Shown here in pieces: positions 1 to 58,931 of a DNA stretch of 64,000 nt (its first letter is position 1; the number at the start of each line of letters is the position of its first letter). A program made the translations under genes and the position numbers. Source of the DNA: Octopus sinensis. Taxonomy: Eukaryota. The notes beneath the pieces were generated by a model. The model ran no database searches and was not told the origin of the DNA. It was given only the letters and a program-made list of their open reading frames with translations. The DNA lies in NCBI RefSeq assembly GCF_006345805.1, contig NW_021833026.1, positions 806,001 through 870,000 of the forward strand. Reading direction: 5' to 3'.

Positions 1-1234
<1,234 letters not shown>

Positions 1235-13342: not shown

Positions 13343-14450
13343 ATGCTGGAATCTTATGATTCCTTGGTTCGGAGGTCTGCGGAGAAAATTCTCAATGTGC
13401 ATTTCGACGATATTGCCTGGTGTCAGGCTAAACTTCCTGTGAGTCACGGGGGTCTGGGCCTCCATTCTAGTATGGATTTGGCTCTTCCTGCCTTTCTTTC
13501 TTCGGCGTCTGGATCATATCTTCTTGTCCAAAAGATTCTGGAAAAAACTACTGAATCATCGTTGGACTCTGATATTGATTCGGCCCTCGCTTTTTGGAAA
13601 CGCAATTTCTCTGAAGTCCCTTCCGATGTCTTTTCTCAGCGAGACTGGGACAAAATTCTTTGCCATCGATCTTCAACTGACTTGGAACCACTCCTCGACC
13701 AACACAGACTGGCTTGTTTCCGTTCCGCCTGTCAGCCATACTCAGGCTCCTGGCTGAATGTACTCCCTTCTCCGCTTTTGGATACTGTCCTCGATAGGGA
13801 TTCACTCCGTCTGGGTATCTGTAATCGCCTTGGACTCCCTGTCTGCAGACCTCACCCATGTCGTTGTGGGGATAAAGTTGACGCCTTTGGGCTACATCCT
13901 CTGTCTTGTCAAATGAGCGCCGGCCGATTTCCTCGGCACACCGAAATCAACAATCTAACTCAGAAAGCTCTGGAAAGAGCTGGTTTCCCTTGTATTCTGG
14001 AACCGACGGGCCTTGTTCTTGAAGATGCAAAACGTCCAGACGGCTGTACGCTGTTCGCTTTTGAATCCGGGAAGCAGCTCGTTTGGGATGTCACCTGTTC
14101 CGACTCTTTCGCCAAGGGTGCCTTAAATGCTACGGCTTGTCGACCCGGTTCGTCGGCTGAGAAGGCCGAATTCGCAAAACTAACGAAATATGAGGATTTA
14201 CTCGTTCTATTTTGCTTTTGGGCAATTGCCGTCGAAACTTCCTGTGTTTTTGGGGCCAAGACGCTTGCTCATTTCAAGAAACTTGGCCGCCTGTGCACCC
14301 ACCGCTCCAGAGATCCGAGGGAATTTATATTCCTTATTCAGAGGATCTCGCTGGCTGTTTTACGCGGGAATTGTCTTTCAATCCTGCGAGCCAGTTCATA
14401 GTAGCTAGATTTTTTTTTGACGATTTCTCTTATTCAATCAAATAATATTC
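13343..14450 (+). mobile_element. 5'-truncated CRE-clade non-LTR retrotransposon (open 352-aa C-terminal frame)
   Basis: QAKLPVSHGGLGL, SGSWLNVLP, CRPHPCRCG...HPLSC...RFPRH, KRPDG, WDVTCSD, KLTKY, AVETS, QRISLAVLRGNC. Confidence 0.92.
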
Positions 14451-17543: not shown

Positions 17544-20500
17544 AATTGTGGTGGTCCTTGTTGGTCAGAATATTAACAATCCACATTGGTCAAAAACAAC
17601 TCAAATAGTCAGTATATTTGTCAACCTATCTTATCTTTTTCTTTCATTTTATCTCTCCATCTATCATTTCCTTTTCTTTCATTTTATTTGTCCTTCTATC
17701 TCTTCCATTTCTTTATTTCATTTCTTTCTGTCCATCTTTCTTTTCTATTTCTTTTTTATACCTTTCCATCTTTCTTTTCTATTTCTTTCCTACGATGGCT
17801 ATTTGCTCTTCGTGCAAAACTAGCAACGATCGGAAGAAAGGTAGATACTGTTCTGGCTGCAACAGTTTCTTCCACCTTTCGTGTGTTCGACTTTCCAGGC
17901 GCGTTTCAGCTTCTCTCATAACCTGGAACTGCCCTGTTTGTCGTTCTTGCAGGCCGGTCCCGGCCAACTGTCCGCTGGAAATCCCTGCTGAAAGTCCATC
18001 TCCGTCAGCCGAAGATGCTTTAAGATTCATCTATTCTTCTCGCTGTAACCGCCAAATTCCGGCACGGATACCGAAGGCAGCGAGGATTCAAGCTGCTCTC
18101 TCTTTGTCCACAGCTATAAACCGCGCTTTGTCATCTAATGACCAGTCTGACTGGTTACTCCTTTTTGGTTTTGCTGTTTTCGGTATTGGGATCCAACCCT
18201 CCCGGCCCGACAGCGAGTCTAAAAAACTTTCTCCCGCATCAATTATTAAACAGCAACTCGCCCTATTCGATCATTGTACTTCTCTGTTTCCCTCCCAGTT
18301 CGATTCCCTCCACTCTGACTCTCACAAATGTGTCGCCCCTTCTGTGGTTAACACTAAAACTTCCTCCGATTGCATTTACCTCCGTCGTAAGGTGAACAGC
18401 AAGCTGTTGGATGGCGATGTCCGTGGAGCTGTCAGACTTGTTGCCTCCTCTAACCGGCTTTTGCCCCCATCTCCTCCCGTTTTGTCTAATTTGAGATCCA
18501 AGCACCCCAGTCTTCCAGTAAACTCCCGCACCCAACCCGCTATCGATACGACCGCCCTTCCGCAACTGCTGGTTACCGCTTCACAGGTCGAGAAGGCACT
18601 GAAAAGTTTTTCCCCAAGCAGTAGTGGGGGTATAGATGGGCTGAAGCCCGGACACATTAAAGACTTGACTTCACCTCTTACTGCTGAGGCAGGCCGTCTC
18701 CTCTTGGAATCTATCACCAATCTCTGTAACCGTCTTATCGGTGGTAATTTACCGGATTTTGCCCGGGCGATTTTCTTCTCGGCTAATCTCACTGCTTTGG
18801 GTAAAAAAGATAACGGGGTCAGGCCGATCGCCGTGGGTAATGTTTTCCGCAGATTGGCCGGAAAGCTCGTTTGCCACGTTGTGATCCCCGAGTTGGTCCC
18901 GAAATTTTTGCCAGTCCAATTGGGCGTCGGCGTCAGTGGAGGGTGTGAATCGGCTGCCCATGCCGTAAGAGAACTTATGGATTCTTCATTGGAATATCTT
19001 TTAGTTAAACTTGACATATCAAATGCGTTTAACACAGTGAGACGGGATCATTTGCTCGAGACCTGCCTTTCTCTCGCCCCCTCCGCCTATCCTCTGGTCC
19101 ACCTTTCGTACTCACAACCCAGCCTCCTCCTTTTTGGCGATTCCTTTATCGTCTCATCGACCGGAGTGCAACAGGGAGATCCCCTGGGGCCTTTTCTATT
19201 TGCTATGTGTGTCAACTCCGTAGCTCATTCTGTCCGCTCTCCGGTAAATATCTGGTACTTGGACGACGCGACGATTTGTGGACCTCCCCGCTATGTCTTA
19301 GACGACCTGCGGAGCATTATCCCGGCCCTTTCATCCATCGGTCTGGAGATAAACTCAAGCAAGTCCGAAGTCCTAAATCTGAATATTCCTTCCGATTTTT
19401 TTGCCGAAACTCTGGATGCCCTGGAACCTATTCTAAAAGGCGCGCGGGTATCAGAAACAAAGGACCTTGTAATCCTTGGTTCGCCAATCGGTCACGAGGC
19501 CCTCTCACAAACGCTCATCGCCAAGGCAAGCAATCTGTCAAACATGATCGAACGGCTTTCCCTCATTGATGCCCACGTCTGGTTTTTTCTTCTGCGTAAC
19601 TATTTCTCAACTCCGAGACTTTTGTACACCCTAAGGAGTTCTCCTTGTTTTCGCATGCCTAATCTGTTATCCGATATCGATTCTATCTTGAAGTCTGGAG
19701 CCGAGTATCTGTGCAACATCCATTTCGACGCTCTGGGGTGGCTTCAATCTTCCCTGCCTGTTAATCTCGGGGGGATTGGCCTTCGTTCGCCCGTTTATCT
19801 GGCTCTTCCTGCCTTCCTCTCGTCCCTGGCATCATCCCGTGCCCTCACTGACATCGTTCTCAGAAACCTTCCCGAACGAAAAATGTCAGTTGATCACGTG
19901 GCCGCTCTGGACCTTTGGGATTCTGCGTATACCAAAAGACCTGCCGACCCATCCGTCCAGGGTCAGTGGGATTCGATCACTTGTGACACTCTCTCCTCTG
20001 TCCTGCTTCAGAGTTTCGACCAGCACAGGCTGGCCTGTCTTCGTGCGGGCTGCAGTCCGGGCAGTGGGGCCTGGCTTGACGCCCTTCCCCTACCGAACAT
20101 CGGGACACTACTAGACGGCGATTGTCTCAGAGTCGCTATTTCTCTGCGTCTCGGTTTGAAGATCTGTGAAATTCACAAGTGCCGCTGTGGGGCCATGATC
20201 GACCAGTACGGACTACACCCTCTTTCCTGCAGACGCAGTGCTGGGCGGGCACCACGCCACACAGCCTTAAATGACGTTGTCTTGAGGGGTCTCAATGCTG
20301 CCGGAATTCCATCAATCCTAGAACCGGCTGGGCTTGCTAGGGGAGACGGAAAAAGACCTGACGGTCTATCCACCTTCCCCTTTGAGTTCGGCAAGTCGCT
20401 GATTTGGGACGCGACATGTTCAGATACTTTCTCTGAACCTAATCTTCCCTTGTCAGCCGTCGCAGCCGGTTCGGTGTCCCTTAGAACAGAAAAGCTTAAG

Positions 20501-20776
20501 ATTGCGAAATATAGAGAACTCTCGGAGCGATATCTATTCGCCCCTGTTGCTGTCGAGACTTCAGGGGTCATTGGGGAAAAGTCTTTGACTTTCCTCTATA
20601 AGCTCGGGCGTCTGATCTCTCTGAAGAGAAATGACACACGCGAGACGGGCTGGCTCCTTCAGAGGATTTCCCTTGCCATCGTACGAGGAAACTGTTTCTC
20701 CATCTACGAAGCGGGGAAGTCCTCTAACTAACTTTATCACATTTAATTACATTGTATCTTGTTTCAAAAAAAAAAA
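17544..20776 (+). mobile_element. full-length CRE-clade non-LTR retrotransposon
   Basis: TSD AAGTACGATTT at 17533-17543 and 20775-20785; pyrimidine-rich 5' UTR; single open ORF; short 3' UTR; poly(A) 20766-20776. Confidence 0.95.
17795..20731 (+). CDS. PHD finger + reverse transcriptase + zinc knuckle + REL endonuclease (978 aa)
   Basis: C-x2-C-x11-C-x2-C-x4-H-x2-C-...-W-x-C-x2-C at the N-terminus; RT motifs VRPIAVG, KLDISNAFN, GVQQGDPLGP, YLDD; HKCRCG...HPLSC...H; KRPDG, WDATC, AVETSG, QRISLAIVRGNC. Confidence 0.95.
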   Translation: MAICSSCKTSNDRKKGRYCSGCNSFFHLSCVRLSRRVSASLITWNCPVCRSCRPVPANCPLEIPAESPSPSAEDALRFIYSSRCNRQIPARIPKAARIQAALSLSTAINRALSSNDQSDWLLLFGFAVFGIGIQPSRPDSESKKLSPASIIKQQLALFDHCTSLFPSQFDSLHSDSHKCVAPSVVNTKTSSDCIYLRRKVNSKLLDGDVRGAVRLVASSNRLLPPSPPVLSNLRSKHPSLPVNSRTQPAIDTTALPQLLVTASQVEKALKSFSPSSSGGIDGLKPGHIKDLTSPLTAEAGRLLLESITNLCNRLIGGNLPDFARAIFFSANLTALGKKDNGVRPIAVGNVFRRLAGKLVCHVVIPELVPKFLPVQLGVGVSGGCESAAHAVRELMDSSLEYLLVKLDISNAFNTVRRDHLLETCLSLAPSAYPLVHLSYSQPSLLLFGDSFIVSSTGVQQGDPLGPFLFAMCVNSVAHSVRSPVNIWYLDDATICGPPRYVLDDLRSIIPALSSIGLEINSSKSEVLNLNIPSDFFAETLDALEPILKGARVSETKDLVILGSPIGHEALSQTLIAKASNLSNMIERLSLIDAHVWFFLLRNYFSTPRLLYTLRSSPCFRMPNLLSDIDSILKSGAEYLCNIHFDALGWLQSSLPVNLGGIGLRSPVYLALPAFLSSLASSRALTDIVLRNLPERKMSVDHVAALDLWDSAYTKRPADPSVQGQWDSITCDTLSSVLLQSFDQHRLACLRAGCSPGSGAWLDALPLPNIGTLLDGDCLRVAISLRLGLKICEIHKCRCGAMIDQYGLHPLSCRRSAGRAPRHTALNDVVLRGLNAAGIPSILEPAGLARGDGKRPDGLSTFPFEFGKSLIWDATCSDTFSEPNLPLSAVAAGSVSLRTEKLKIAKYRELSERYLFAPVAVETSGVIGEKSLTFLYKLGRLISLKRNDTRETGWLLQRISLAIVRGNCFSIYEAGKSSN

Positions 20777-23606: not shown

Positions 23607-24460
23607 ATGGTATCGAAGTTGGTCAAACAAAAAACAAAGAAAAATACTGAAAAAGTTGAAATTACGGAAACAGAGGATATAAATTCAAATTGGAAAAAAC
23701 TAAAAAAGGTCAAATTGAGACAAAACATTTACAGGAATTAAGTTCCAACACCACAAAAACTAAAAAGAAGAATAAAACCAAATCCACCCACAAAATCACA
23801 CAAATCAAACCTCAAAGCCCAACAACTGCTGCACTCCCTCAAGAAGTTCCCCGGAAAGTCTCAAACCTGACAAAACTAGTCGGCCTCGACTGTGAAATGG
23901 TGGGAGTCGGCCTGGAAGGGAGAGAGGATGCCCTCGCCCGCGTTTCTCTGGTCAATTCTCACGGAATCTGCATCTTTGACCGATATCTACAAATCCCCGA
24001 AGAAGTGGCCAACTACCGAACCCACGTGTCCGGCATCCGCCCCTCCGACATTGCCTGCGGTGGTCTCTCTTATATATTCGTAGGATGGGACTTTAATGAC
24101 GTGATGGCCGATGTGCACTGTTTGGTGAAGGATCGGATAATTGTGGGCCACGATTTGCGGAAGGACTTTAAGGTAGGTTATATTGGGGAGGATAGTTGCT
24201 GTACATTTCACATTCCAAGAGATATGTGCGTGATACGTCCACGTTTTATGTGTTTAAGCAAATGTTTGGGGGACGGAGGCCGTCGTTGAAGAAGTTGAGT
24301 AAACAACTGCTTGATTTGGACGTTCAGATGGGGGAACATGACTCGGTAGTGTTTGTGGGTGATTGAGGTGGCGGATGCGGCGGCGGCCATGAGGTTGTAC
24401 AAACTGTACAGGACTCAGTGGGAGGAACATGTCCGCAAGGCTTTCGGGCCGGCAAAGTGA
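23607..24460 (+). CDS. REXO4: RNA exonuclease 4 (DEDDh)
   Basis: NSNWKKL; VGLDCEMVGVG...LARVSLVN...YRTHVSGI...RIIVGHDLRKDFK; RDMCVIRP...SLKKLSKQLL...QMGEHDS; AAMRLY. Confidence 0.9.
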
Positions 24461-26411: not shown

Positions 26412-28017
26412 TGTCGCGAGCCGAGCGCGCGACCGAGCACTAGACGCGACCAATCAAATTTACTCAATGTCAATCAATGTCAAAATAACTTATTTTATTG
26501 ATTAGATCAAGGACAATTATTATTTCTGACTGTTATAACTTCTTAAGTCGTTTGGCATGAACTTTCATTACTGATCCATCACTATTTTCCACATTGACAA
26601 AATTGTTAGACAATTTCGCAACAATAGTGAATGGATCCCCGTATGGATGTTCAAACCTGGTTAATCTCAAGGAAGGATTTGTCCCATAATCTTTTTGAAT
26701 GCGAACCTTTTAAGTAATTATAAAATAAATACAATGTCTCCAATGTTTAATTCATATTTAGACACATGCACTCCCATCTTCCTGTTCATTCTCTTATAAT
26801 ATGGAGAATCCAAGTTAACTTTTGGGAAGTTGAATTCGAATTCATCTTTAGTTGAATTTAAAACATTTACTGTTAATTTCGGGAGTGTATTGAAGTTCAG
26901 CTGCCTCAACATCAGTATTTCCTAAAACAGTATTGAATCCAGGAATTCCACGATATCTCTCAAAGGGGCTAACGCCTGCAAAAAATTTAAGACAAATAAT
27001 TCACCTGTAGATGAATGAGGTGTTTGATTGTACAAAAACACAGTCTTTCTTATGTGTTTTACCCACTCTTTGGTGTCATCCAAACTCATAATTTTTGAAA
27101 GGCTCCTTGTGACCGTCTGATTAAATCGTTCAACAATTCCCTGACTCTGGGGATTGTTTGGTCTTCCATGTATTTGTCGAACACAAAACTCTTCACATAC
27201 TTTTGTCACATGAGAATTTTTGAATTCTGTTCCGTTGTCTGATTGGAGAAACTTGCAGGGACCAAAATCCATAAAAATATCATTCAGATTATTCGCCACC
27301 TCTACTCCACTTTTATTTTTAAGATTCCTTGTAAACGCATATTTCGAATATACGTCTATTACAGACATTAACCAAGAAAAATCATTGTTTTCATTTTTAA
27401 ATCTACAAAATAAGTTAATTTTATACCGTTTAAGATCAATTAAATCTACTTGAAATCTTTCATTAGGTAAATCAGCAACAATATGAGTTGAATCATCATA
27501 TTGTTTTAGTGGAACTGAAAATTTGCAAATATTGCATTCTTTAACAACTTGGCGAATGATCTCTCTTCTCAATATAAAAAATCTTCGCCTACATAAGGCT
27601 TCCAAAGCATTATGTCCGCAATGATTAGCTTCATGAATCTCACGTGCAATTAATTTCATCTCTTCTAAGCTCGTGGAAGCAATTACGAGCTTGTGTAGGC
27701 CGTTTACATCTTTAAGATATAGTTTCCCCTCTTTAATTAGGAAATTTTCTGCTTTCTTTTTGAGTCGATACTTCTTATGTTTGGAAAGATCGACCTCCTC
27801 ATTATTGAGTATAGATCTTAGGAAATTATATTCATCTTGATCTTTTACAAACAAACGCTGGCCCGACATAACAAAGTGTAGACAAAATTATGCTAGCGTG
27901 GATAATATTTTATCTGGGTGAGTATGGTACGCCGGCAATTAGACTGACAGGTGGATGACAGGTATGACAGGTGTCAAAGTCGCGTCTAGCGCTCGGTCGC
28001 GCGCTCGGCTCGCGACA
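26412..28017 (-). mobile_element. Ginger2/TDD-like DNA transposon (gypsy-type integrase), apparently intact
   Basis: TGT...ACA ends; 39-bp TIRs with 1 mismatch (26412-26450, 27979-28017); 5-bp TSD TAATA (26407-26411, 28018-28022). Confidence 0.92.
26533..27869 (-). CDS. HHCC + DDE integrase/transposase, 410 aa after removing four introns
   Basis: HEANH...CNIC; QVDLID, QSDNGTEF, PQSQGIVERFN. Introns 27403-27426 (24 nt), 26976-27004 (29), 26846-26870 (25), 26707-26732 (26), all GT-AG. 1337-104=1233 nt = 411 codons ending in TAA. Confidence 0.85.
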
Positions 28018-28229: not shown

Positions 28230-30230
28230 GATTTTTGGGATGGTGCGTTCAGGAATGCGCAAATCCAAGCTCCACTGCCCGGGGATGCTGCCGAAAGAAG
28301 GCAAGCTCGGCGGTGTTGGTTGGACGACCCGAGCAGCTGATTGAAAGTTTGATGCATCCTATTCGATCCCAGGCTCGTTGATCATTCGATCTTTCGGAAA
28401 GTCAAGACATTGTTCCCTCCAGACTTTGCTGAAATGAGCCCAGGAAAATTCAGAAACATAGAAAAACGGGGAATGATAAGTCGGAATATAAGCAGATGCC
28501 AAAGGCAATCGCGAGAGTTTCCTGTCTCCAACCCCTATCGTTGAAGGGGGAATTGCACATGTTTTGAGTACATGTACGGATAAGGTGGTTAATGGCGGAA
28601 AGTCTCTCTCGAAAAGCAAAACACAGAGAAGAGCGTAGCAAATAAGAGAGCTTTTGGATTGAAAAGCAATTTTGTAGAAGGAATAATGCTGTGTGAGTCC
28701 AACTGACTGATACGTTCAAAAACTTCCTCGAGAAAGAGTTCTTTTTTGCGTAGGGCCACATCGATAGAGTTGCCAGCTACCGGGGCTCCGAGGATAAAAG
28801 TTCGTCAATGGGAGTAGATTGAACTCCCGGGATAAGATCGCAGAAAGAGGAAACAGCTTCTTCGAAAATAGATTGCGAGCATCCGAAGTTGGAAATTTCA
28901 CATTTGGAGAAATTTAAAATGAGGCCGATTTTCTCCAGAGCCGGAATAATTTTAATTATGTCCCAGAGGGCCCCCCTGTTGAACTCCAGAAGCAGACGGG
29001 ATAGTGTCGGAATCAAAGATAAGGGAGATGGTTGGCCGTATGATTGGAAAGTTACCCAAATAAAAAAGGACAATACTCAGAGCAGGCCTCCAAAACTCGG
29101 TCCCGTCGAATACTGTTGAATGCATTTCTGATGTCAAGCTTGATCAAAATGTTAGGACATTGTGATTTCCTGCACGCATCTGAGAAAGTGCGGATAGCAG
29201 GAACAGCAGATTCACATCCTCCAGTTGGACTGGACTGAGCTTTGCGGCAATGGTGGGGATAATTTTCTTGCATGCGATCTTGGCTGCAAGGCGACGGAAG
29301 ACAAAGCCGACCGCAATTGGGCGGATCCCTCCGCATTTTTTGCCAAAAGCGGTGAGATTGGCTGAAAAGAGAATGTGACGGATAGTATCTGGCAGATTTC
29401 CTTGGAGCAGTTCATCTAACAGGCAAGTGATAGATTTGAGCAGACGAGTGGCAGGCTCACCCACGATATGAGCGGTAAGGTCCTTCAAATGTCCCGGGCT
29501 CCTCCGCTGCTGCACGGAGAATTTCCAGCCACCGGGGCTCCGAGGATAGAAAGTTCGTCAATGGGAGTAGATTCCACTCCCGGAATAAGATCACGGATCG
29601 AGCAAACAGCGTCTTCGAAAGTAGATTGCGAACACCTTTATATTTTTCTCCTGTGTAACTGCAACACAAAAGAAGTGTCATACGTTCTTTTCTTATTTTA
29701 TGTCCGCTGTGTGACTCATTTCTTTCAACAAAACTCTTTTTGGAAACAGTTTTATACAATAATGCAGTTGTATCACAGTTGAAAATGTTTTGAAGTTTTG
29801 AAGCAAATCATTGAAGGTTGATCGGAAGTTTTCCGCACCTGCTTTATCAGTTGGTCGTGATTTGCCATGTTATTTTCCTATTTCTTGAGTCTGTAAAGCC
29901 ATCCATTAGAAGCAGTGAAATCATGATTCGAATTTCTATACGCAATTTGTTTGGACGTGGGGATTTCTTCCACGCATCTGAGAATGTACGGATAGCATGA
30001 ACTGCAGATTCACATCCTCCAGGCACGCCAACCACGAGTTGGACTGGGCTGAGCTTTGCAGAGATGGTGGAGATAATTTTCTTGCATGCGATCTTGGCTG
30101 CAAGGCGACGGAAGACAAAGTCGACCGCAGTTGGGCGGATCCCTCCACATTTTTCACAAAAGCGATGAGATTGGCTGAGAAGAGTATGTGACGGATAGTA
30201 TCCGGCAGATTTCCTTGGAGCATCTCCAAA
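28230..30230 (-). mobile_element. scrambled, partly duplicated CRE-clade RT fragments
   Basis: PGHLKDL, LFSANLTAFGKKCGGIRPIAVG, KLDIRNAFNSIRRD, GVQQGGPLG, ASPGSGAW; 28790-28900 repeats at 29520-29640 and 29170-29410 repeats at 29970-30220. Confidence 0.85.
29640..29800 (-). mobile_element. pogo DDE-domain fragment
   Basis: FNCDTTALLYKTV...SGHKIRKERMTLLLCC. Confidence 0.7.
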
Positions 30231-34699: not shown

Positions 34700-36157
34700 T
34701 TAATTTTTCCTAGAATATGACCTCCTCCCTCTCTCATCGACGGAAACCAGGTACCACGAATTGTCCCAGACCATGTCCAGTGAATGGATAGGCTCATAAG
34801 GAACTATTTTAATACCAATCCAATTACTCTTATCATAAGCCTCCTCACGATCCTTCATAATCCGAGTGTACTCCTCCGCCGACACCCTCATTCGGCCTGC
34901 CAACGTCGACTCCAAGTCCCGAGACCCAGTCCTCAGTGTAGCCAGCACGGTCTCATCCTCAGAAAACCTCATTTTAAAGAGGGAGGATGTATATCCCGAA
35001 CCATACGAGAACATGAGCACATTTTTCCCCACAAGAGCACTGTCCTCACACCTTACAACAATGACCCCACAAAACTCACAGCGAAAAGGCAGAAATCAAA
35101 CTAAAGTACAAGGAAGCCGTATATGCGTTGCCAATTATTTTGTTGAGTCTTAATCCCTCACTAACTTTATCCGCCATAACTTGAGCTGATTTTTTAACAT
35201 AGTATGACTCGACGGCCTTATCCCCAAAGACAGAACTGTCGACGACGAGTTCCCTGAGACTGACAAGGGAAAGGCGACTTGAATTGGTCAGGGAGGTCAT
35301 CGCGCTCGTCGAACATGCTCAGCAAGGCCACCGACTTGACTACCAGCTTGGTGAAGGGACAGTGCATGAGGACCACATCGACCGACCCCAGTGACCCTCC
35401 TTACATGAGTTATCACACACACCCTCAAGATTGCGGTAGCAGTCGAGGAGAGCCTCGTAATAACACTTTATAGAGAGTCCCCCGTCCACCGTCGGGTACT
35501 CGGAGGTCATGTTTGGTTTGTAAAAGTCGTAGGCATGGGCCATGCAGCTTGTCTTGGAATCTACGGTGAGAGAAGGAAGTACTATTCTCGAGGACAATGG
35601 CAGCATTGGGGCCCAAAAGCACAGCCACGGCCCCCGCCCCGCCCGTACAACGAGCATTCCCCGAGGAGTACACAGCAATGTCGACCATCACGACCAAGGC
35701 ATATCTCCGACCTACCCACGTGACATAACACGTGACCATCCCAGGCAGATGACTCGAGCCAATTAATAGAATTGAAAAGAGCAGCAGTCCCGCCATAGCA
35801 GGCATTTATGCAGTCCACTCCTTCCACGTTTCGGTTGCCACTTTCGGCAAAGAGAGCCATCAGGTAACTCTTCACGGACTTGCACTTGTCCACGATTGAT
35901 TCGGTCCCCACTTCCAGTCTTCCAATGTCTTTGTAGTCTATTTTGCACGTCCTCATTAGTTTGTCCACAGCGTTCATGGCCAGAGAGACCACGTCTTCCC
36001 GGTCGCTGCAGAATGCCATTTGTGATTGGCCTATTCCGATTGTGTATCTCCCGGTGGAGACTCCGTCCAGTCGCTCGAGGTCATCCTGGCCTACGTACAA
36101 CTTGGGAACATAGGCGCTCATTGACACTATTCCGAGATTTGTGCGATTGACAGGCAT
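34700..36157 (-). CDS. HMGCS1: hydroxymethylglutaryl-CoA synthase (cytosolic type)
   Basis: [19 protein letters not shown], catalytic [65 protein letters not shown]. Confidence 0.95.
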
Positions 36158-36339: not shown

Positions 36340-38285
36340 ATGCCAAAAATTAGTGATAAATTTTTAAGATTATATCCCTCTAACTAAAAAATCAACTCGG
36401 TAAGTCTGGGACTTGTTCAGACAGGTCTGCTCTAGTCCGGGCAAAATGAAAGTGACTTTGGAAGTGAGGCAATAAGTGTGCTTAGGCATATTTGCCATTC
36501 CAATAGTGTCAGATAACAAAACAGTGACAGCTATATTTAGTATGGCTGTCAATCCTGGCCAATCTATTCGGATTTTCTCTCTAGGATAAGTCAGGAGTGC
36601 TCTTAGCATTTTCTTTGTTTGGGCGCAATTATTGACTGACAGATTGATTAATGCAGCGATGTGTCGAACTACATATAACCGCTTCTCTCAGGTCGTACAG
36701 AGTGCATGACTAGTCGGCAAGAGGAGGATAGGCCAAGTTGGACGTCCAGCAATGAGTTAGTACTCGACTTGATTGGAATAGTGATACAACTCAGTGTGTG
36801 ATTAAACTATCCCAAAACATACATTTGGCCAGAAAATATATAAACAAACTCTCACGTTGTCTTGCAATCAAGTTTTCTCTCTCCTAACTAATCCAAGTTT
36901 ATTTTAGGACGGAAAACGAGAACAGTCGACCCATTTCCGCACGAGAAACCCCCCAATCAAGTTTCCCCTCCCTTTCAGGGGCAGACGAATACGTGGATGC
37001 CAACATCCAGTCCATCATCCAACACCTCGACATTTCCAACAACCAGCTGACCAACCTTACTCGCTATTTGTCCACGAATATAAAGTGGTTGGTTGAGATC
37101 TTTCATTCCCAGCACAAAGATCTTCCACGAGGAGAGAGAGACCGTCAGACTGTCGGGAATACAACGACTTGTAAGGTGGGACATCACGTGTAGGACTCCC
37201 CCACCCTGGCCAGCTGGGACTTTGACGTCTACTCGAAGAAGGACACGCTGCCCGACTCGATTTTGACGACAATCTTCTACTCAATCTTTAAAGTGAGTTG
37301 TCTGACTGAGACAAAGCATCGAGAATTTGAGAGAAAACTAAATATTGGGCTGTCGAAGTTTGTCCGACTGATCCAGCGAGTGGAAAACAAATACCACAAG
37401 CAGAATCCATACCACAACAACTTCCACGCGGCCTTGGTGGTGCACTCACTCAACGCTATGCTCGACATGGCCTTCTTCGAGGTGTTGACGGGGTCATTTC
37501 CAGGGGTTCTTTTCTGACTTGCAAGTCTTTTCCGCGCTGTTGGCCGCAGCCATACACGACGTGGATCATCCGGGACTGAGCAACACATATCTGGTCAACA
37601 CAAGTAGGTCCCCTGGGCTATTCAGACTCCCAGCTGGCTCTGATCTACAACGACATTTCTGTGCTGGAGAATCACCACTTAGCCACCGCCTTCCAACTCA
37701 TGAGGAACCCGACAGCGAAATTCTCGTCGATTTCAGCACTCAGGACAAAATGCTGGTGAGGAAGCTCATGATTGAAATGGTCCCGTCTCGACTGACTTTC
37801 CAGGTCATGGGGACCGATATGAAAGCCCACCACAAACAACTGGCCGACATGGACCGACTCCTTCAGACCAGGGGAAACCAGTTCAAGGAGAATTGCACAT
37901 TCGAGGACCGAATCCAGGTCAGGGCCGTCTTTGATGCCAGATTCTGAAATATGCCCTTCATTGTGCAGACATTAGCAACACAGTGAGGTCTTTCGACCAG
38001 TACTGGGAGTGGTCGAGCAGACTGATGGACGAAAACTTTATTCAGGGGGACTTGGAAAGGACTAATTTGTCGCCAATTAGTCCACATTGTGACAGAAACG
38101 ACTTTGACTTTGCAAAATGGCAGGTTGACTACATTCCTTCATTTCCTAAGGTCAGTTTCATGGAGAACATTGCTGCTCCCCTGTGGAGTGGGTGGGACAG
38201 GCTGGTCTCCCCCGGTGATGACAAATTTTGTCAAATTATCAAAAGGAACTTGAGGCAAATGATTTCCAAACTGAAAAACGATTAA
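36340..38285 (+). CDS. cyclic-nucleotide phosphodiesterase, PDE4-like; 5' boundary uncertain
   Basis: WDFDVY, NPYHNNFHAA, AAAIHDVDHPGLSN, VLENHHLATAF, GTDMKAH, LHCADISN, ENFIQGDLE, ISPHCDR. Exons upstream of ~36990 are not resolved. Confidence 0.85.
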
Positions 38286-47335: not shown

Positions 47336-47429
47336 TAAATATTTTTATTACGAAAAAAGAATTCGGTCAAGTGTTGAATTGAAAAAATTGCGCAAATGCA
47401 AACGGACTGGGATGTATTGGTTGATTTTG

Positions 47430-48230
47430 AGTGATGGCTCGCCAGTCTGAATGACACAACACCACCACCTTCCTTTATCAACTGCTTGAGTAGGGAGGAC
47501 TACTTGATTTTTGAACGTCATTAATGGGTCGAATGTAACTCCAAGGATTGAAGGGTTCCCTTTAACTGGGATTAGTTCCCAGAAAATTTTGATGCTAAAG
47601 TTTTCCTCGGTATTGAATCGAATGCTTTTTCGATATCCAGAGCGACTAACAGTGTTCTTTGATGTGGTTTTGAATAGTTCAGTCAATCTGAGATGAACAT
47701 CGTAAGATATGTACAAGTTGAACGATCTCTTCTGAATCCATGTTGAAAACTGGGTAATTCTAACAAAAGAGTAATTTTGTTGAGAATTAGTTTTTCCAAT
47801 GTTCTTGAGAATCCACAAAGAATTGATACAGGACAATAACACCGTGGAATGTTCAGAGATTTGTCCTTTTTGGTATCGGGTGTATGAGTGATTTTTTCCA
47901 TAATGACGGAGTAATTGAAAACTTGGGTAAAGGCTTCGATTCCCACCGGCCCCAAGTGTTTTAATTCATTAATTGAAATATCGTCAGCTCCTATTGACCT
48001 TGTATTCTCATGTATTCAATTACATGAAAAGTATCTAAGAGTTTAAAGTATTCATTTTATTGATATTTTGTCTTCTTGTGTTTCGGTTCATGTTCCATTT
48101 CAAATACGGTTTGTGACTGATGCTAGCATAAAATTTCATTAGTGTGTCAGGGGTGACACTTGGTGTATGGTGGCTGGGTATCTTTTTGAGTTTCCGTAAG
48201 GTTTTCCATAACGACGATGTTCGGTCATAA
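47430..48230 (-). mobile_element. I/Jockey-group LINE RT fragments
   Basis: PVSILCGFSRTLEKLI...FQHGFRRDRST and PSILGVTFDPLMTF; 47878-48000 recurs at 50080-50235. Confidence 0.7.
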
Positions 48231-48293
48231 AATAGAATTACGCTGAGAATCGAATATTTGAAAGAAAAATTGCGCAATTGCAAACTGACTGGG

Positions 48294-49660
48294 ATGTATT
48301 GGCTGCTTTTGAGTATTGCCTGTTCAAGTTAATTATAAATACGCAATTTAGTCGGTGCCGATGTGACCATAATCAGTTATTCGAACGACATTAAGATAAA
48401 TGAAAGCTTTTCAGCCACCTGCAAGTCGAGCACTGACAAAATGACTTACTGGCAGTTCAAAGGACAAAACATAAGCAACTACAAGGACATTTACTCGTTC
48501 CCAGTTGAGGACAATGAAATCATTTTCATTCCCAAAATGAGAGAAGACTTGTTTGGAAATTACACGTGCAAGGACGGACAATCACAGAAAACAATAGAAT
48601 TATACAACTATGGTTGTACTTTTTATAATCAATATTATTAATTAATAATTGGTAGACGAGACATTCGGAATATTCGGATGTGTTGACACAGTGGTGACTG
48701 CCCGACTCCGGGACCATTTGATTCCCTGCAGAATAGAAGTCCGTCATAATCTCGAAGGTCGAATTTTTTGGATTAAGGACATCCAATTATTGAGTGAATT
48801 ATATCCTTGCAATACTCACAGACAACACGGCCAAAATAAGCATAAACGACGACGGAATTGTCATCAAAGACTTTACTTGGGAAGATCAAGGGCTATACCA
48901 AGTCTCAGTGTACACTAATCGGAACGTCAATCTCCACCTGAAAGTACGAGTCACTCTCGCTAGTAAGCCCTCGTGAGCTCAAATATGCAGTTGTACCCGA
49001 AGTCTCAATAACTGGGATTGAACTGCTGGTTGGAAGGACGCAGTTGCTGAACTGTATTATCAGATCGCCACGGGAAGTGCAGTTCGATTTTGTTAGCCCT
49101 TTTTGGATTACAGTAAGTCAGTGGCTTGACGGGTAGAGAAATAAAGTTTCAAAATGTGAGAAATATTTTGGATTAGTCGAATGCCGAACGACACTCACAT
49201 TGTTTGCTAAAAAACTGGATGCTTATGAAATCAGGTGTAATGCCTCGAACATGTACGGAAGTGAGTCAGAGTCTCATGTGCTTCACCATGTGTGTATGTT
49301 CTCCATTGTTATTGTAGCAATTCCTTCCATGCCGCGTCTGAAGACAAAAAACGGGAGATTGTTCTGGGGCTCCCCCGGGCAGTACTCGTCGAACTTCAGT
49401 TCACCGAACTACACTTCCTCGACATTGGTCCACGTCGAAGTTTTCTAACATTGTGATTGTGCTAGTCACTCTGCTACTCCATGGACTTAATATTCCCGTC
49501 GGGTGTGAGCAGTGCCCTATTCTGTGATTTGGTAAAGTATACGGACGTGTACCTTGTATCAGTGAAAGTATATAACTGGGAGCTTTCGTCTGGCGTGGTG
49601 CATGGGGCATTTGAACTGATATGCAAAGATCTTGACCCCTGCAACAACACTATTTTTTAG
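48294..49660 (+). CDS. secreted Ig-superfamily protein (signal peptide + 3 Ig + FN3-like), paralog 1, 382 aa
   Basis: MYWLLLS IACS|IGAD signal peptide; Ig1 ATC..YWQF..GNYTC; Ig2 IPC..FWIK..DQGLYQV; Ig3 LNC..IRCNASNMYG; FN3-like PSMPRL..LFWGSP. Eight introns (24,43,28,28,24,21,24,26 nt) give an open 383-codon frame. Confidence 0.8.
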
Positions 49661-50307
49661 GACGTCGAAACTATGTTGTTTGATTAAGAAAGATGCTAAT
49701 TTCTTTTTACGTTAGACTAAAATATGATTACTTTAAACGATATTTAAGTACTTTGCGAGTTTTAGACGAATTTTAATTTCCACGGGGTTTTAAGACATGA
49801 ATGTCCTTCAAGATAAGTAGTGAATCTGAATGGCCTTCACAGCCAGAAGATGACTTTCCAGAACAATTTATGGCCTTTCCATTCTCTGTAAAACATAAAA
49901 CTAAATAAAATGGTTAAATGCCACATATTTCGCTCGGAAAAGTCAATCAATGTTTTAGTTTCGAGAACTATCAAAGAAATGATTTTTTAAAGTACATGTG
50001 GTTGGACTCCGCAAGTCATGTTGCACCAGAACCAACGGTCTTGGAGAGATTGTTAAGATTAAACATGCATTTAATCATATCGGGTGTATGAGTGATTTTT
50101 TCCATAATGACGGAATTTCATTTTTGTTAACTGAGTAATTGAAAACTTGGGTAAGGGCTTCGATTCCCACCGGCCCCAAGTGTTTTAATTCATCAATTGA
50201 AATATCGTCAGCTCCTCTTGACCTTATATTTTTCATGTATTTAGTTATGAATTACGCTGAGAATCGAATATTTGAAAGAAAAATGGCGCAAATGCAAACT
50301 GACTGGG

Positions 50308-51679
50308 ATGTATTGGCTGCTTTTGAGTATTGCCTGTTCAAGTTAATTATAAATACGCAATTTAGTCGGTGCCGATGTGAACATAATCAGTTATTCGAAC
50401 TACATTAAGGTAGATGAGAGCTTTTCAGCCACCTGCAAGTCGAGCACTGACAAAATGACTTACTGGCAGTTCAAAGGACAAAACATAAGCAACTTCAAGA
50501 ACATTTACTCGTTCGTTGTGAAGGGCCAAGAAATCTTTTTCATTTCCAGACTAAGAGAAGACTTGTTTGGAAATTACACGTGCAATGACGGACATTCACA
50601 AAAAACAATAGAATTATACAACTATGGTTGTACTAATTTTATAATCAATATTATTAATTAATAATTGGGAGACGAGACATTCGGAATATTCGGATGTGTT
50701 GACACAGTGGCGACTGCCCGACTCCGGGACCATTTGATTCCCTGCAGAATAGAAGTCCGTAGTAATCTTGAAGGTCTGGTTTTTTGGAAGAAGGACAACC
50801 AATTATTGGGTGAATTATATCGTTGCAATACTCACAGAAAATACGTCCAAAATAAGCATAAACGACGACGGAATTGTCATCAAAAACTTTACTTGGCAAG
50901 ATCAAGGCTTATACCAAGTCTCAGTGTACACGAATCATAACGTCAATCTCGACCTGCAACTACGAGTCACCCTCGCTAGTAAGCCCACGTGACCTCGAAT
51001 ATGCAGTTGTACCCGAAGTCTCAATAATTGGTCACAATATGGGGATTGGAAGGGGACAGGCGTTTATCTGTAAGATCAGTTCGCCACTGGAAGTGCAGTT
51101 CGATTTTGTATCCCCTATATGGATTACAGTAAGTCAGTGACTTGACGGGTAGAGAAATAAAGTTTCAAAATGTGAGAAATATTTTGGAGTAGTCGAATGC
51201 CGAGCGACACTCACCTTGATATCTTCAGAAGAGGATACTTATAATATGACGTGTAATGCCTCGAACGTGTACGGAAATGATTCAACGTCTTTTTTGGTTT
51301 CCACTCTGCGTATGTCCTCCACTCTTGTTTTAGCAATTCCCTCCATGCCGACACTGTGGTTAGAAAACGAGAGACTCTTCTGGGGCTCTTCCAGTCAGTA
51401 TTCTTCGAACCTGAGTTCACCGAACTACACTTCCTCGACATTGATCCACGTCGAAGTTTGCTGACATTGTGATTGTGCTAGTCATTCTGCCCTTACTCCA
51501 AGGACTTTATATTCCCATCGGGTGTGATCAGTGCCAGATTCTGTGATCTGGTTTACTATACGGACTGGTACACTGTAGCAGTGACTGCATACAAGTGGGG
51601 GGTTGCGTCTGAGGTGGCGTATGGGTATTATATGCTGTCATGTGTTGATCGTTCTTATCCCTGCCGCTACCCACTCTAA
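50308..51679 (+). CDS. secreted Ig-superfamily protein, paralog 2, 383 aa
   Basis: Same nine-exon structure as paralog 1 (introns 24,45,28,28,24,21,24,26 nt); open 384-codon frame ending ...PCRYPL*. Confidence 0.8.
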
Positions 51680-51797
51680 GAGGACCTTGGTTATTGATTC
51701 CGTGGTTAAGATTCTTTTTTACTTTGGGCTAAAATATGTTTACTTTAAACGATATTTAATCAAACAAAACTCAATGAAAAAACTCGATGTTAAGTTA

Positions 51798-57351: not shown

Positions 57352-58931
57352 ATGCCGAAAGAAAGCACTTTGAACAGTTTCACATCAATATCCACCAAAT
57401 CCCAGTCCTCAATAAAAGAAAGATCCACAACAAAACTAAGACCTCAAGACAGGGCCTTCCTTTCCTCCCTCTACCGACGAATGAACTCCAGATTAACCCC
57501 CACAGCAGACTCTGTGGCACTCTCCAACATCTTCAAAAACTTTTCTGACTCGGATTTGAAGGACCTGGCCCAAAAGGACGCGATGGGCAGACGCCTGGAC
57601 ACTGCTGAGGGCGATTTCCTCATCCCCGACCGACAACGCACAAACACGGCCATTCTGGAGACCAAAATGTCGATGGGCCACACCTCAATGCGGGAAATGC
57701 TGCCCAAGAATGCCTACGAGGAAAGACTCAACCACATCCTCTTCAATGGACAGCTCGGGGACAACAATGTGTTCAGATATGGCCATCCCTCCAAAGACAG
57801 AGGTCCCCTCCCTCCACCAACATAGATCCCTATATCAGAATGACACAGGCATTGGACAGCATTGTGGATGAGAAGTGTCCGAAGAGTAAGTTGGAGACAA
57901 TCGAGAGGGAACCCAGCTGTGTGTTCAATTGTCCGGGACTGGCGGATGACTACTGTTGGGTGGCCTAATCGATGGTAGATTTGAACGTGCTGGACTGTTC
58001 GATCAGCACAAAAGTGGCGGTGGGGTTGCAGGACTATGTGTATATATGGGACAACTCCACCCGAAGGACGACTCGTCTGTCCACGTCCTCCCAGAATGAC
58101 AAGACGCTGTGTTCTGTCCGGTGGAGTGTGAGTGGGAGTAGTCTGGCAGTCGGACTGTCGACGGGGAGTGTGGAGATATGGGACATTGCCACATCCCGAG
58201 TGGTCCGCTCGATGTGCATGCGGATGGGCAGGATTGCTTCCCTGGCCTGGAATGGCATTGGCCTCACCAGTGGGTCCCGTTCTGGCATGATGTTCAACCA
58301 CGACCTGAGAGTACGGGACCACAAAGTCCACACCTATTCAAGACATTCCCTCGAGGTGTGTGGACTCAAGTGGGCGGGTGATGGCAGGAGGCTCGTCTCC
58401 GGGGGGAACGACGACATTGCCTGTGTGTGGGATGCCCGCAATCTCAATGTCCCCGCCAACGTCTTTGTCCACCAAGCCGCGGTCAAGGCTGTCGATTGGA
58501 GTCCTCAAAACACTTCTTTGCTGGCCACGGGAGCAGGGTCAGACGATAAGAAGATTCGTTTGTTCAATGTGTCCCTGGGAAGTGAGATTGCTCAGCACGA
58601 CACAGGGGAACAGGTGGGATAGGATGGATTGTGTGTTAGGTCTCCGCCGTTGTGTTTTCCAAGGTCAGCAACGAGTTGTTTAGTTCGCATGGATCCCCCG
58701 GGAATGAAATAAATGTGTGGAGTCTGCCCAAATTGAAGAATTCCTACAGTATTCCTGGTTGTCTTTCCTTGGTTATTCGTAGCTCACTCTGCCAGGATTC
58801 TGGGGATGGTGATGTCCCCCGATGGAAAGATTGTGGCCACTTTATCCTCCGACTGTACTCTAAAGATGTGGGACTGTGTTAGTAGAACTAAGCCCAAAAT
58901 ATCTGCCTTTACAAATCCATTCATTTATTGA
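57352..58931 (+). CDS. fizzy-family (CDC20/FZR1) WD40 APC/C activator, divergent
   Basis: PGLADDYY|LNVLD, LAVGL..G.VEIWD, HSLEVCGLKW..DG..LVSGGND, HQAAVKAVDWSP...LLATGAGSDD, MSPDG...D.TLKMW. Confidence 0.88.

What the first reader, a model, noticed from the sequence alone, without database searches (positions are those of the whole stretch)
48294..51679. Tandem secreted Ig-Ig-Ig-FN3 paralogs with exons diverging faster than introns
Both genes are intact, with a signal peptide and no visible TM or GPI tail. In the 83 codons of the Ig1 exon I count 16 amino-acid-changing versus 3 silent codon differences, clustered in FPVEDNEIIFIPKMR versus FVVKGQEIFFISRLR. Intron 1 is identical and introns 3, 5 and 6 differ by one base each. 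Ig3 and the FN3 tail differ even more. This pattern fits diversifying selection on a secreted recognition, adhesion or decoy family, plausible at a parasite-host interface (inference).
Basis: partly seen in the sequence, partly recalled or inferred. Interest (0 to 1): 0.7.

Follow-up and report, generated by a model that had tools for sequence, protein, structure and literature searches.

The report
Mosaic tandem Ig genes in dicyemid
Two neighbouring genes for secreted immunoglobulin-like proteins, on what is almost certainly dicyemid-parasite DNA inside an octopus genome assembly, differ in sharply bounded stretches of their exons while introns and flanks stay alike; this suggests selection for different binding surfaces, but two copies cannot prove it.

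Summary
Both genes are real and intact: A 48294-49660 (377 aa) and B 50308-51679 (378 aa), each with 8 exons and introns of 24-60 nt. Exons differ at 179/1131 sites (15.8%) and introns at 14/233 (6.0%). Its intron counts are only partly right, since intron 6 differs at 5/24.

The contrast is really one of tracts against background. Six hypervariable tracts (31% divergent, almost all exonic) sit on a uniform ~5% background shared by the remaining exon sequence, introns, the 5' flank and an upstream retrotransposon remnant. Allowing for this clustering, the depletion of differences in introns has p~0.02-0.03.

Overall omega is 1.0-1.25 and not significant. Only Ig3 exceeds 1 (2.9, p=0.015, uncorrected). 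Silent sites are also elevated inside the tracts, so point-mutation diversifying selection alone does not fit. Segment replacement, or gene conversion that spares selected patches, fits at least as well.

The copies are not pseudogenes: there are no stop codons against ~8 expected, and all 19 Cys/Trp are conserved. Ig1 and Ig2 are supported by Pfam and Ig3 only weakly. The "FN3" call is unsupported.

The contig belongs to the Octopus sinensis assembly but has 22-28-nt introns, so it is most likely dicyemid. No homologues were retrievable.

The parts
48294..49660 (+). Gene A, 377 aa: signal-like leader, Ig1, Ig2, Ig3 and a C-terminal ~105-aa beta-type domain. Exons 48294-48327, 48352-48612, 48656-48793, 48822-48962, 48991-49116, 49177-49293, 49318-49439, 49466-49660. 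Introns are 24, 43, 28, 28, 60, 24 and 26 nt. Alternative intron 5: 49113-49160 (48 nt).
   Evidence: Manual GT..AG model giving an uninterrupted ORF. Pfam I-set 27.0 bits against cut-off 23.7 (residues 130-175) and Ig_3 24.9 bits (25-85). PDB profile match of residues 196-270 to titin I-set domains, E=7e-4.
50308..51679 (+). Gene B, 378 aa, same architecture. Exons 50308-50341, 50366-50626, 50672-50809, 50838-50978, 51007-51132, 51193-51309, 51334-51455, 51482-51679. Introns are 24, 45, 28, 28, 60, 24 and 26 nt.
   Evidence: Same model transferred by alignment; the ORF is intact. Pfam I-set 30.6, Ig_3 30.3 (cut-off 30) and Ig_2 27.1 (cut-off 27) bits. 73% aa identity to A.
48501..48539 (+). 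Hypervariable tract 1 (Ig1 exon): 13 differences in 39 nt. Peptides PVEDNEIIFIPKM versus VVKGQEIFFISRL.
   Evidence: Two-state HMM segmentation of the A/B alignment; difference track.
48745..48774 (+). Hypervariable tract 2 (Ig2, exon 3): 8 differences in 30 nt.
49012..49103 (+). Hypervariable tracts 3 and 4 (Ig3, exon 5): 49012-49064 (22/53) and 49094-49103 (5/10).
   Evidence: The Ig3 domain has ML omega 2.86, p=0.015.
49199..49397 (+). Hypervariable tract 5: exon 6, intron 6 and the first two thirds of exon 7 (54/199). It is the only tract that includes an intron.
   Evidence: Intron 6 differs at 5/24.
49469..49660 (+). Hypervariable tract 6: nearly all of exon 8 (61/198 alignment columns, including three 3-nt indels).
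47874..48022 (.). Upstream block shared with 50078-50247. It is part of a reverse-strand sequence that I read by eye as a non-LTR retrotransposon remnant. It marks the 5' edge of the duplicated unit and differs by only 3-4 mismatches in ~120-130 aligned nt, plus a 20-nt indel. Copy A then carries ~210 extra nt (48023-48234).
   Evidence: Global alignment, blastn, re-alignment. The RT-like reading of ORF 47348-47842(-) is by eye only; Pfam gave no hit.
48235..48293 (+). Conserved 5' flank/5'UTR of gene A (counterpart 50249-50307): 2-3 differences in 59 nt.
47375..47432 (+). Remnant of a third copy: 5'UTR plus the first ~7 codons (92% identity to 48265-48314 over 50 nt). It is truncated and abuts the retrotransposon-like sequence.
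   Evidence: blastn; sequence read.
49700..49747 (+). Conserved 3' block after the stop codon (counterpart ~51712-51759), ~4 differences in 44 nt. It is the 3' edge of the duplicated unit and a likely 3'UTR/processing signal (inference).

Best explanation
These are two functional, tandemly duplicated genes of a dicyemid parasite, carried as a contaminant contig in the Octopus sinensis assembly. Each encodes a soluble, N-glycosylated secreted protein made of three Ig-like domains and a C-terminal beta-type domain.

The duplication is young, with about 5% divergence everywhere outside the tracts. Six sharply bounded exon segments have been remodelled to about 31% divergence, while the fold-determining residues, introns, exon ends and flanks stayed alike. 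Remodelling hits all three codon positions equally and often changes charge. It is most plausibly segmental: multi-nucleotide or templated replacement of the kind described as 'accelerated segment switch in exons' (ASSET). Selection would retain such changes because they give the two proteins different binding surfaces.

Shown here: gene structure, intactness, the mosaic pattern, omega values, and conservation of the framework residues. Inferred: secretion, young age, the segmental mechanism, positive selection, and any role in adhesion or recognition (host renal epithelium, the parasite's own cells, or gametes).
For: Both ORFs are intact with identical exon phases.

A simulation of 179 random substitutions gives a mean of 8.1 stop codons, with no stop-free outcome in 4000 runs. 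It leaves 11.6 of 19 Cys/Trp conserved, against 19/19 observed. All exon indels are 3 nt.

Background exon divergence is 30/635 (4.7%), intron background 11/211 (5.2%), and tracts 163/529 (31%). The 5' edge of the duplicated unit, a retrotransposon-like remnant, differs at only ~3% despite large indels. This argues for a young duplication rather than homogenisation.

Differences by codon position are 75/50/54. There are 45 multi-hit codons among 126 differing codons. 40 of 103 replacements change charge.

Ig3 has omega 2.86 with LRT p=0.015 and Fisher p=0.015. Amino-acid differences are clustered (p=0.003).

The N-terminal leader is the only hydrophobic segment. There are 8-9 N-glycosylation sequons and 12 conserved Cys.

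The same pattern of conserved introns with switched exon segments is described in PMC2474615.
Against: There are only two sequences, so changes cannot be polarised and no site model can be fitted.

Overall omega is not different from 1 (p=0.30-0.48). The Ig3 result is nominal.

Silent divergence is also high in the tracts (4-fold 23.5% against 6.8%). This needs a mutational or historical explanation rather than selection alone.

No donor sequences or further paralogs could be found. No expression or splice evidence was accessible. The tract definition is post hoc. Secretion rests on hydropathy only.
Confidence: 0.42

Rival explanations
1. This is an old duplicate pair kept alike by repeated gene conversion. 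Conversion homogenises introns, flanks and the conserved exon parts. Selection removes conversion events that would erase functionally diverged exon patches, so these patches keep the true, old divergence. From memory, this is the same logic used to explain introns being more alike than exons in the human red/green opsin genes.
For: Silent sites inside the tracts are about 4 times more diverged than outside (8/34 against 5/74, p=0.023; pS 0.26 against 0.07). Silent changes are enriched near amino-acid-variable neighbourhoods (14/103 against 9/170, p=0.023). Conserved stretches run across exon/intron boundaries and include exon ends (8.7% within 15 nt of junctions). Divergence rises from 5' to 3'.
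Against: The outer 5' edge of the homology should escape conversion most easily. It is a retrotransposon-like remnant differing at only ~3%. Tracts show no third-position excess (61/44/42) and have pN/pS of 1.19, so even here the patches lack purifying selection. Several separate conversion tracts would each need to be centred on a short intron.
Confidence: 0.28
2. There is no adaptive divergence. After duplication the proteins drift under relaxed constraint (omega near 1) apart from a structural core. The ultra-short introns and adjacent exon ends are held constant by splicing requirements, so introns are a poor neutral yardstick.
For: Overall omega is 1.0-1.25 and not significant. Exon ends near junctions are as conserved as the introns. 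Dicyema introns are at the lower size limit and have reduced splice-site motifs (PMC13644364), so other intron sequence may matter for recognition. Whole-gene 4-fold sites against introns give only 12% against 6% (p=0.08).
Against: The non-intronic, indel-ridden upstream remnant and the 5' flank are equally or more conserved (~3-5%). The 14 introns share little consensus beyond GT..AG. The 60-nt intron 5 is not length-limited, yet it differs at 2/60 between exons that differ by 22-26%. Differences are clustered rather than spread. Ig3 has omega of 2.9.
Confidence: 0.22
3. Assembly artefact: the two 'copies' are alleles, or versions from different co-infecting dicyemid species or individuals, wrongly laid in tandem when long reads from a mixed parasite population were assembled together with the host.
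For: The DNA comes from an uncontrolled parasite population inside host tissue (inference). [quoted passage not shown]
Against: The copies are separated by a 330-nt unique spacer. They have different upstream structure (20-nt and ~210-nt indels), and a third truncated 5' remnant lies nearby. This looks like a locus with a real duplication history. The contig is 892 kb long.
Confidence: 0.05

Closest known systems
I-set/C2-type immunoglobulin-superfamily ectodomain modules (Dscam, contactin, titin-type Ig domains)
   Same: Ig1 and Ig2 match the Pfam Ig_3/Ig_2 and I-set models around their cut-offs. Ig3 aligns to titin I-set domains, including the ..TLT(L/V)...D.(G)xYxCxAsN.xG motif. The best library hits to the Ig1 exon are multi-Ig proteins named Dscam from a pseudoscorpion, plus tick Ig proteins.
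   Different: No orthologue or close family member was found in any database. The spliced protein found nothing at E<=0.01 in 5.8 billion proteins. The proteins are short, with no TM or GPI anchor. Ig2 lacks the F-strand cysteine. The C-terminal domain could not be assigned to any family.
[quoted passage not shown]
   Same: Paralogs have highly similar introns and conserved cysteines and fold. Discrete exon segments are radically different between isoforms (PMC2474615 abstract; PMC2711939 listed). Here six tracts are 31% divergent against a 5% background.
   Different: The protein fold and biology are unrelated, since this is not a toxin. Only two copies are available. The segments are still 69% identical rather than unrelated. 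The mechanism is unknown in both systems.
Intron homogenisation by gene conversion with selection keeping exon differences (human red/green opsin genes; recalled from memory, not checked here)
   Same: These are tandem paralogs whose introns are more alike than some exons. Silent sites in the differing exon parts are also diverged.
   Different: Here the edge of the duplicated unit is also nearly identical. The diverged parts show no purifying selection.
Fibronectin type III domain
   Same: The resemblance is by eye only: PxxP start, LFWGSP, and a YTDxYxVxV 'tyrosine-corner-like' stretch.
   Different: There is no fn3 hit in Pfam even at E<=10. No FN3 chain appears in the PDB profile search at E<=1. 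hhalign against two classical FN3 domains gives probability 0.2%.

Membership tests
Immunoglobulin superfamily (Pfam I-set PF07679, Ig_3 PF13927, Ig_2 PF13895) | Profile match at or above the curated cut-off | tested here: met
   I-set scores 27.0 (A) and 30.6 (B) bits against cut-off 23.7, on Ig2. For Ig1, copy B reaches Ig_3 30.3 against 30 and Ig_2 27.1 against 27, while copy A is just below (24.9, 19.1).
Immunoglobulin superfamily | B-strand Cys, C-strand Trp and F-strand Y-x-C core in each domain | tested here: inconclusive
   Ig1 has C35/W45/Y82-x-C84. Ig3 has C213 and Y250-x-x-x-C254, with Phe in the C-strand position according to the titin alignment. Ig2 has C123/W137 but Val in place of the F-strand Cys. 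All of these residues are identical in A and B. No usable 3D model was obtained: AF2 of the Ig1 exon gave pLDDT 48.7.
Third Ig domain (residues ~192-272) | Significant profile match | tested here: inconclusive
   No Pfam hit under either splice model. The PDB profile search finds titin I-set domains at E=7e-4 for the whole sequence, but the per-domain i-Evalue is 0.09-0.12.
Fibronectin type III (PF00041) | Profile or profile-profile match of the C-terminal ~105 residues | tested here: not met
   No fn3 hit, no FN3 chain in the PDB search, and hhalign probability 0.2%.
Secreted soluble protein | Cleavable N-terminal signal peptide; no TM segment; no GPI signal | tested here: inconclusive
   The highest 19-residue hydropathy is at residue 1 (1.6-1.75). 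There is no other hydrophobic segment, and the last 19 residues average about 0. There is no upstream in-frame ATG (sequence). The leader is short (11-14 aa). SignalP and NetGPI were not available.
Genes under diversifying (positive) selection | dN/dS significantly above 1 | tested here: inconclusive
   Whole gene: omega 1.25, LRT p=0.30; pN 0.160 against pS 0.155. Ig1 1.34, Ig2 0.70 and C-terminal domain 1.01, all not significant. Ig3 2.86, p=0.015 uncorrected. Site models need more sequences.
ASSET-like exon segment switching | Introns and some exon segments nearly identical among paralogs, other exon segments sharply different, structural cysteines kept | tested here: met
   This is a description of pattern only, based on two copies.
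Gene-conversion-homogenised paralogs | Identity tracts independent of exon/intron borders; old silent divergence in unconverted parts; homology edges more diverged than the interior | tested here: inconclusive
   The first two features are met. The third is not met at the 5' edge (~3%). The 3' edge is ~9%.
Dicyemid (Dicyema) genome | Animal genes with spliceosomal introns mostly under 30 nt; association with Octopus sinensis | tested here: met
   Ten of the 14 introns here are 24-28 nt. HMG-CoA synthase in the same window has 25- and 22-nt introns. The record is VCDQ01001555.1 of GCA_006345805.1, the O. sinensis assembly. Among 51 animal genomes, only myxobolids and D. japonicum have such introns (PMC13644364). 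D. japonicum lives in O. sinensis (PMC6736024).
Dicyemid (Dicyema) genome | Direct sequence match to a Dicyema assembly or transcript | not testable with these tools
   No Dicyema data were reachable. The best non-self HMGCS hit is 65-66% identical, which also rules out an octopus origin for the gene.

The most novel reading that the evidence does not exclude
A dicyemid-specific, otherwise orphan family of secreted Ig-domain proteins diversifies by switching short exon segments on a constant intron/framework scaffold. This would be the first ASSET-like case outside venoms, in an animal that has otherwise lost almost all of its IgSF repertoire. The variable surfaces would mediate attachment to, or recognition of, the cephalopod host or of gametes.
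Probability: 0.15. Interest if true: 0.6.

Novelty: new member of a known kind. Interest (0 to 1): 0.35.

Why it matters
Dicyemids are about 30-cell parasites with only ~5,000 predicted genes. One survey detected Ig domains in only 6 sequences (PMC6543705). A duplicated, fast-changing secreted Ig protein is therefore a reasonable candidate for the almost unknown molecular interface between dicyemids and the octopus kidney, or for gamete or self recognition.

There is also a methodological lesson. A raw count of 'exons differ more than introns' plus a replacement:silent ratio overstates the case for positive selection when differences come in tracts and silent sites co-vary.

There is a practical point too. 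An 892-kb contig of the O. sinensis reference assembly appears to be parasite DNA, which matters to anyone using that assembly.

Tried and rejected
1. Homologue search with the spliced protein A found no hit at E<=0.01. No paralogs or orthologues were therefore available for codon site models.

I did not try to obtain those results another way, and submitted only the single-exon Ig1 sequence taken from the window.

3. AF2 of the Ig1 exon gave pLDDT 48.7. This is too poor to map variable sites or run a fold search, so neither was done.

4. A full HMMER scan with the Ig1 exon profile found only generic multi-Ig proteins.

5. Attempts to reach DNA beyond the window through ORFs at its ends failed because the ORFs are not on record.

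6. tblastn and blastn of the genes against the window found no further copies apart from a 50-nt 5' remnant.

7. The pseudogene or free-drift reading was rejected by simulation.

8. The FN3 assignment was tested three ways without support.

9. Possible RNA elements in the conserved intron 5 were checked. There was no Rfam hit over 46-53 kb, and the fold z-score was -1.1.

10. The transition/transversion ratio does not differ between tracts and background, so it does not discriminate between mechanisms.

11. No convincing ORFs or genes lie on the opposite strand of the locus.
Full report
**What is there.** Reading 47.5-52.5 kb and aligning the two halves shows a duplicated unit, about 47874-49747 and 50078-51759. 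Hand-built GT..AG models give two intact, co-linear genes.
- Gene A runs 48294-49660 (377 aa) and gene B 50308-51679 (378 aa).
- Each has eight exons with identical phases, and introns of 24, 43/45, 28, 28, 60, 24 and 26 nt.
- Intron 5 has two workable models. One uses donor GTCAGT with acceptor TTAG (60 nt, peptide ..WITVIECR..). The other uses donor GTAAGT with acceptor GTGAG (48 nt, peptide ..WITKYFGLVECR..).
- Both models keep both ORFs open, and both align acceptably to titin I-set D/E strands.

**Where the DNA comes from.** An ORF of the window's HMG-CoA synthase gene is on record on contig VCDQ01001555.1 (892 kb) of GCA_006345805.1. This is the Octopus sinensis assembly.
- The DNA is not octopus-like. 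The best non-self HMGCS hit is only 65-66% identical.
- That housekeeping gene has 25- and 22-nt introns.
- Ten of the 14 introns in the Ig genes are 24-28 nt.
- Among 51 animal genomes surveyed, introns this short occur only in myxobolid cnidarians and Dicyema japonicum (PMC13644364).
- D. japonicum lives in the renal sacs of O. sinensis. Its genome has a mean intron of 38 bp, about 6 introns per gene, 36.7% GC and 49% repeats rich in LINEs (PMC6736024). The window matches this description.
- I conclude, by inference without a direct sequence match, that the contig is dicyemid DNA co-assembled with the host.

**The proteins.**
- Pfam supports Ig2 as I-set (27.0 and 30.6 bits, cut-off 23.7). 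It supports Ig1 as Ig_3/Ig_2 around the cut-offs.
- Ig3 has no Pfam hit. In a PDB profile search it aligns to titin I-set domains at E=7e-4, with weak per-domain values.
- The C-terminal ~105 residues look FN3-like by eye. They have no support from Pfam, the PDB search or hhalign against two classical FN3 domains (probability 0.2%). I therefore call this region an unassigned beta-type domain.
- The only hydrophobic segment is the 11-14-residue N-terminal leader, and there is no C-terminal hydrophobic tail.
- There are 8-9 N-glycosylation sequons, five of them shared, and 12 cysteines, all conserved. A secreted soluble glycoprotein is a reasonable reading, but it was not tested with a dedicated predictor.
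- The spliced protein has no homologue at E<=0.01 among 5.8 billion proteins.
- A full HMMER scan with the Ig1 exon finds only generic multi-Ig proteins.
- One survey detected Ig domains in only 6 dicyemid sequences (PMC6543705).

**Checking the observation.**
- Exons differ at 179/1131 aligned sites (15.8%) and introns at 14/233 (6.0%). The naive Fisher p is 3e-5.
- Per intron the counts are 0/24, 1/43 (plus a 2-nt indel), 1/28, 3/28, 2/60, 5/24 and 2/26.
It was wrong about intron 6.
- The count of 16 replacement against 3 silent codons in the Ig1 exon is exact.

**The differences are strongly clustered**.
- A two-state segmentation finds six hypervariable tracts with 163 differences in 529 columns (31%).
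- Background exon sequence differs at 30/635 (4.7%) and background intron at 11/211 (5.2%).
- The 5' flank (about 3/59) and an upstream block at the very edge of the duplicated unit (3-4 differences in ~120-130 nt, despite 20-nt and ~210-nt indels) are equally or more conserved. I read that upstream block by eye as a retrotransposon remnant; Pfam gave no hit for it.
- Exon sequence within 15 nt of a junction (8.7%) behaves like intron.
- With circular-shift permutations that respect the clustering, the intron depletion has p=0.023-0.028. It comes from the 3' half.
- The true contrast is therefore tracts against background. The tracts are almost, but not entirely, exonic, since intron 6 lies inside one.

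**Selection tests.**
- By Nei-Gojobori counting, pN is 0.160 and pS 0.155 overall (p=0.48). For Ig3, pN is 0.268 against pS 0.124 (one-sided p=0.015).
- A pairwise GY94/F3x4 likelihood fit gives omega 1.25 overall (LRT p=0.30), Ig1 1.34, Ig2 0.70 and C-terminal domain 1.01, all not significant. Ig3 is 2.86 (p=0.015).
- Differences fall 75/50/54 on codon positions 1/2/3, so there is no third-position excess.

**Both genes are clearly maintained.**
- 179 random substitutions with the observed spectrum give 8.1 stop codons on average, and never zero in 4000 trials.
- The same simulation leaves 11.6 of 19 Cys/Trp intact, against 19/19 observed.
- Every exon indel is 3 nt.
- A purifying core combined with an average omega of about 1 implies that some sites exceed 1. 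This is an argument, not a formal site test.

**The complication.** Silent sites are also elevated in the tracts.
- Inside the tracts pS is 0.26 and pN 0.31. Outside them pS is 0.07 and pN 0.045.
- Clean 4-fold sites differ at 8/34 inside and 5/74 outside (p=0.023). The background 4-fold rate equals the non-coding rate.
- A test that does not use silent sites to define the regions also shows enrichment. Silent changes in conserved-residue codons occur at 14/103 in amino-acid-variable neighbourhoods and 9/170 in quiet ones (p=0.023).
- Selection on independent point mutations does not raise the silent rate locally.
- One possibility is that the tracts were changed by multi-nucleotide or templated events. 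This would resemble 'accelerated segment switch in exons' in snake three-finger toxin genes, where introns and some exon segments are nearly identical and other segments are replaced (PMC2474615).
- The other possibility is that the tracts are old divergence which escaped gene conversion because selection protects them.
The 5'-to-3' gradient and the boundary-crossing conserved stretches are compatible with conversion.
- Transition/transversion ratios do not discriminate between the two.

**Other rivals.**
- Relaxed drift with constrained mini-introns is supported by the non-significant omega and the conserved exon ends. It is weakened by the equally conserved non-intronic upstream sequence. 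The lack of any intron consensus beyond GT..AG also counts against it. So do the 60-nt intron 5, which differs at 2/60 between exons 22-26% divergent, and the clustering of differences.
- A mis-assembly of alleles or species is unlikely. There is a unique 330-nt spacer, the upstream structures differ, and a third truncated 5' remnant lies at 47375-47432.

**Dead ends.**
- AF2 of the single-exon Ig1 domain was too poor to use.
- ORFs at the window ends are not on record, so neighbouring DNA could not be fetched.
- There is no Rfam hit or unusual fold in or around the conserved intron 5.
- No convincing opposite-strand gene was found.

**Verdict.** This is a real, well-delimited tandem pair of lineage-restricted secreted Ig-domain genes of a dicyemid parasite, with a genuine mosaic of hypervariable exon tracts on a ~5% background.
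- The pattern is of a known kind: accelerated or segmental exon divergence, or conversion with selection.
- It would become more interesting if the family proves larger, expressed at the host interface, and diversified by segment switching.

Noticed in passing
window 1-64000 (record VCDQ01001555.1, about 806001-870000): The whole window, and probably the whole 892-kb contig of the Octopus sinensis assembly GCA_006345805.1, looks like dicyemid parasite DNA rather than octopus. It has compact genes, 22-28-nt introns, and housekeeping proteins only ~65% identical to any database entry. Users of that assembly may be counting parasite genes as octopus genes.
   Followed up: partly
window 34700-36157 (-): The HMG-CoA synthase gene has introns of 25 nt (GTCACG..GGTAG) and 22 nt (GTACTT..CGTAG). 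These are among the shortest spliceosomal introns known in animals.
   Followed up: partly
window 47375-47432 and 47433-48234: There is a truncated third copy of the Ig gene's 5'UTR and first ~7 codons (92% identity over 50 nt). It sits directly beside reverse-strand sequence that reads like the C-terminal part of a non-LTR reverse transcriptase, although Pfam gave no hit. Part of this sequence was duplicated together with the gene and now lies upstream of both copies.
   Followed up: partly
window 17618-20731 (+); also 13343-14401 (+) and 29144-29515 (-): There is a 1037-aa uninterrupted ORF with RVT_1 and a PHD finger, likely an intact or recently active non-LTR retrotransposon. The two other ORFs have by-eye similarity to its C-terminal or middle parts. 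This fits the LINE-rich dicyemid genome.
   Followed up: no
window 26922-27869 (-): A 315-aa ORF carries integrase zinc-binding and rve core domains, indicating an LTR-retrotransposon or retrovirus-like integrase remnant.
   Followed up: no
window 50627-50671 versus 48613-48655: Intron 2 of gene B ends ..TTGGGAG where gene A has ..TTGGTAG, and it carries a 2-nt insertion. The acceptor AG is kept but its context differs. Whether both are spliced equally well is unknown.
   Followed up: no
window 400-864, 23690-24289, 37519-37947, 57972-58622: Exon-sized ORFs of ordinary housekeeping genes surround the locus: a histidine-phosphatase/PFKFB-like protein, an RNase_T-type exonuclease, a cyclic-nucleotide phosphodiesterase, and CDC20/Fizzy. 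The Ig pair therefore sits in normal gene-dense, transposon-interspersed chromatin rather than in a special array.
   Followed up: no
window 49117-49176 / 51133-51192: Intron 5 is the longest intron (60 or 48 nt) and also one of the best conserved (2/60), between the two most divergent Ig3 exons. No Rfam family and no unusual fold was found, so its conservation remains unexplained beyond the general background level.
   Followed up: yes
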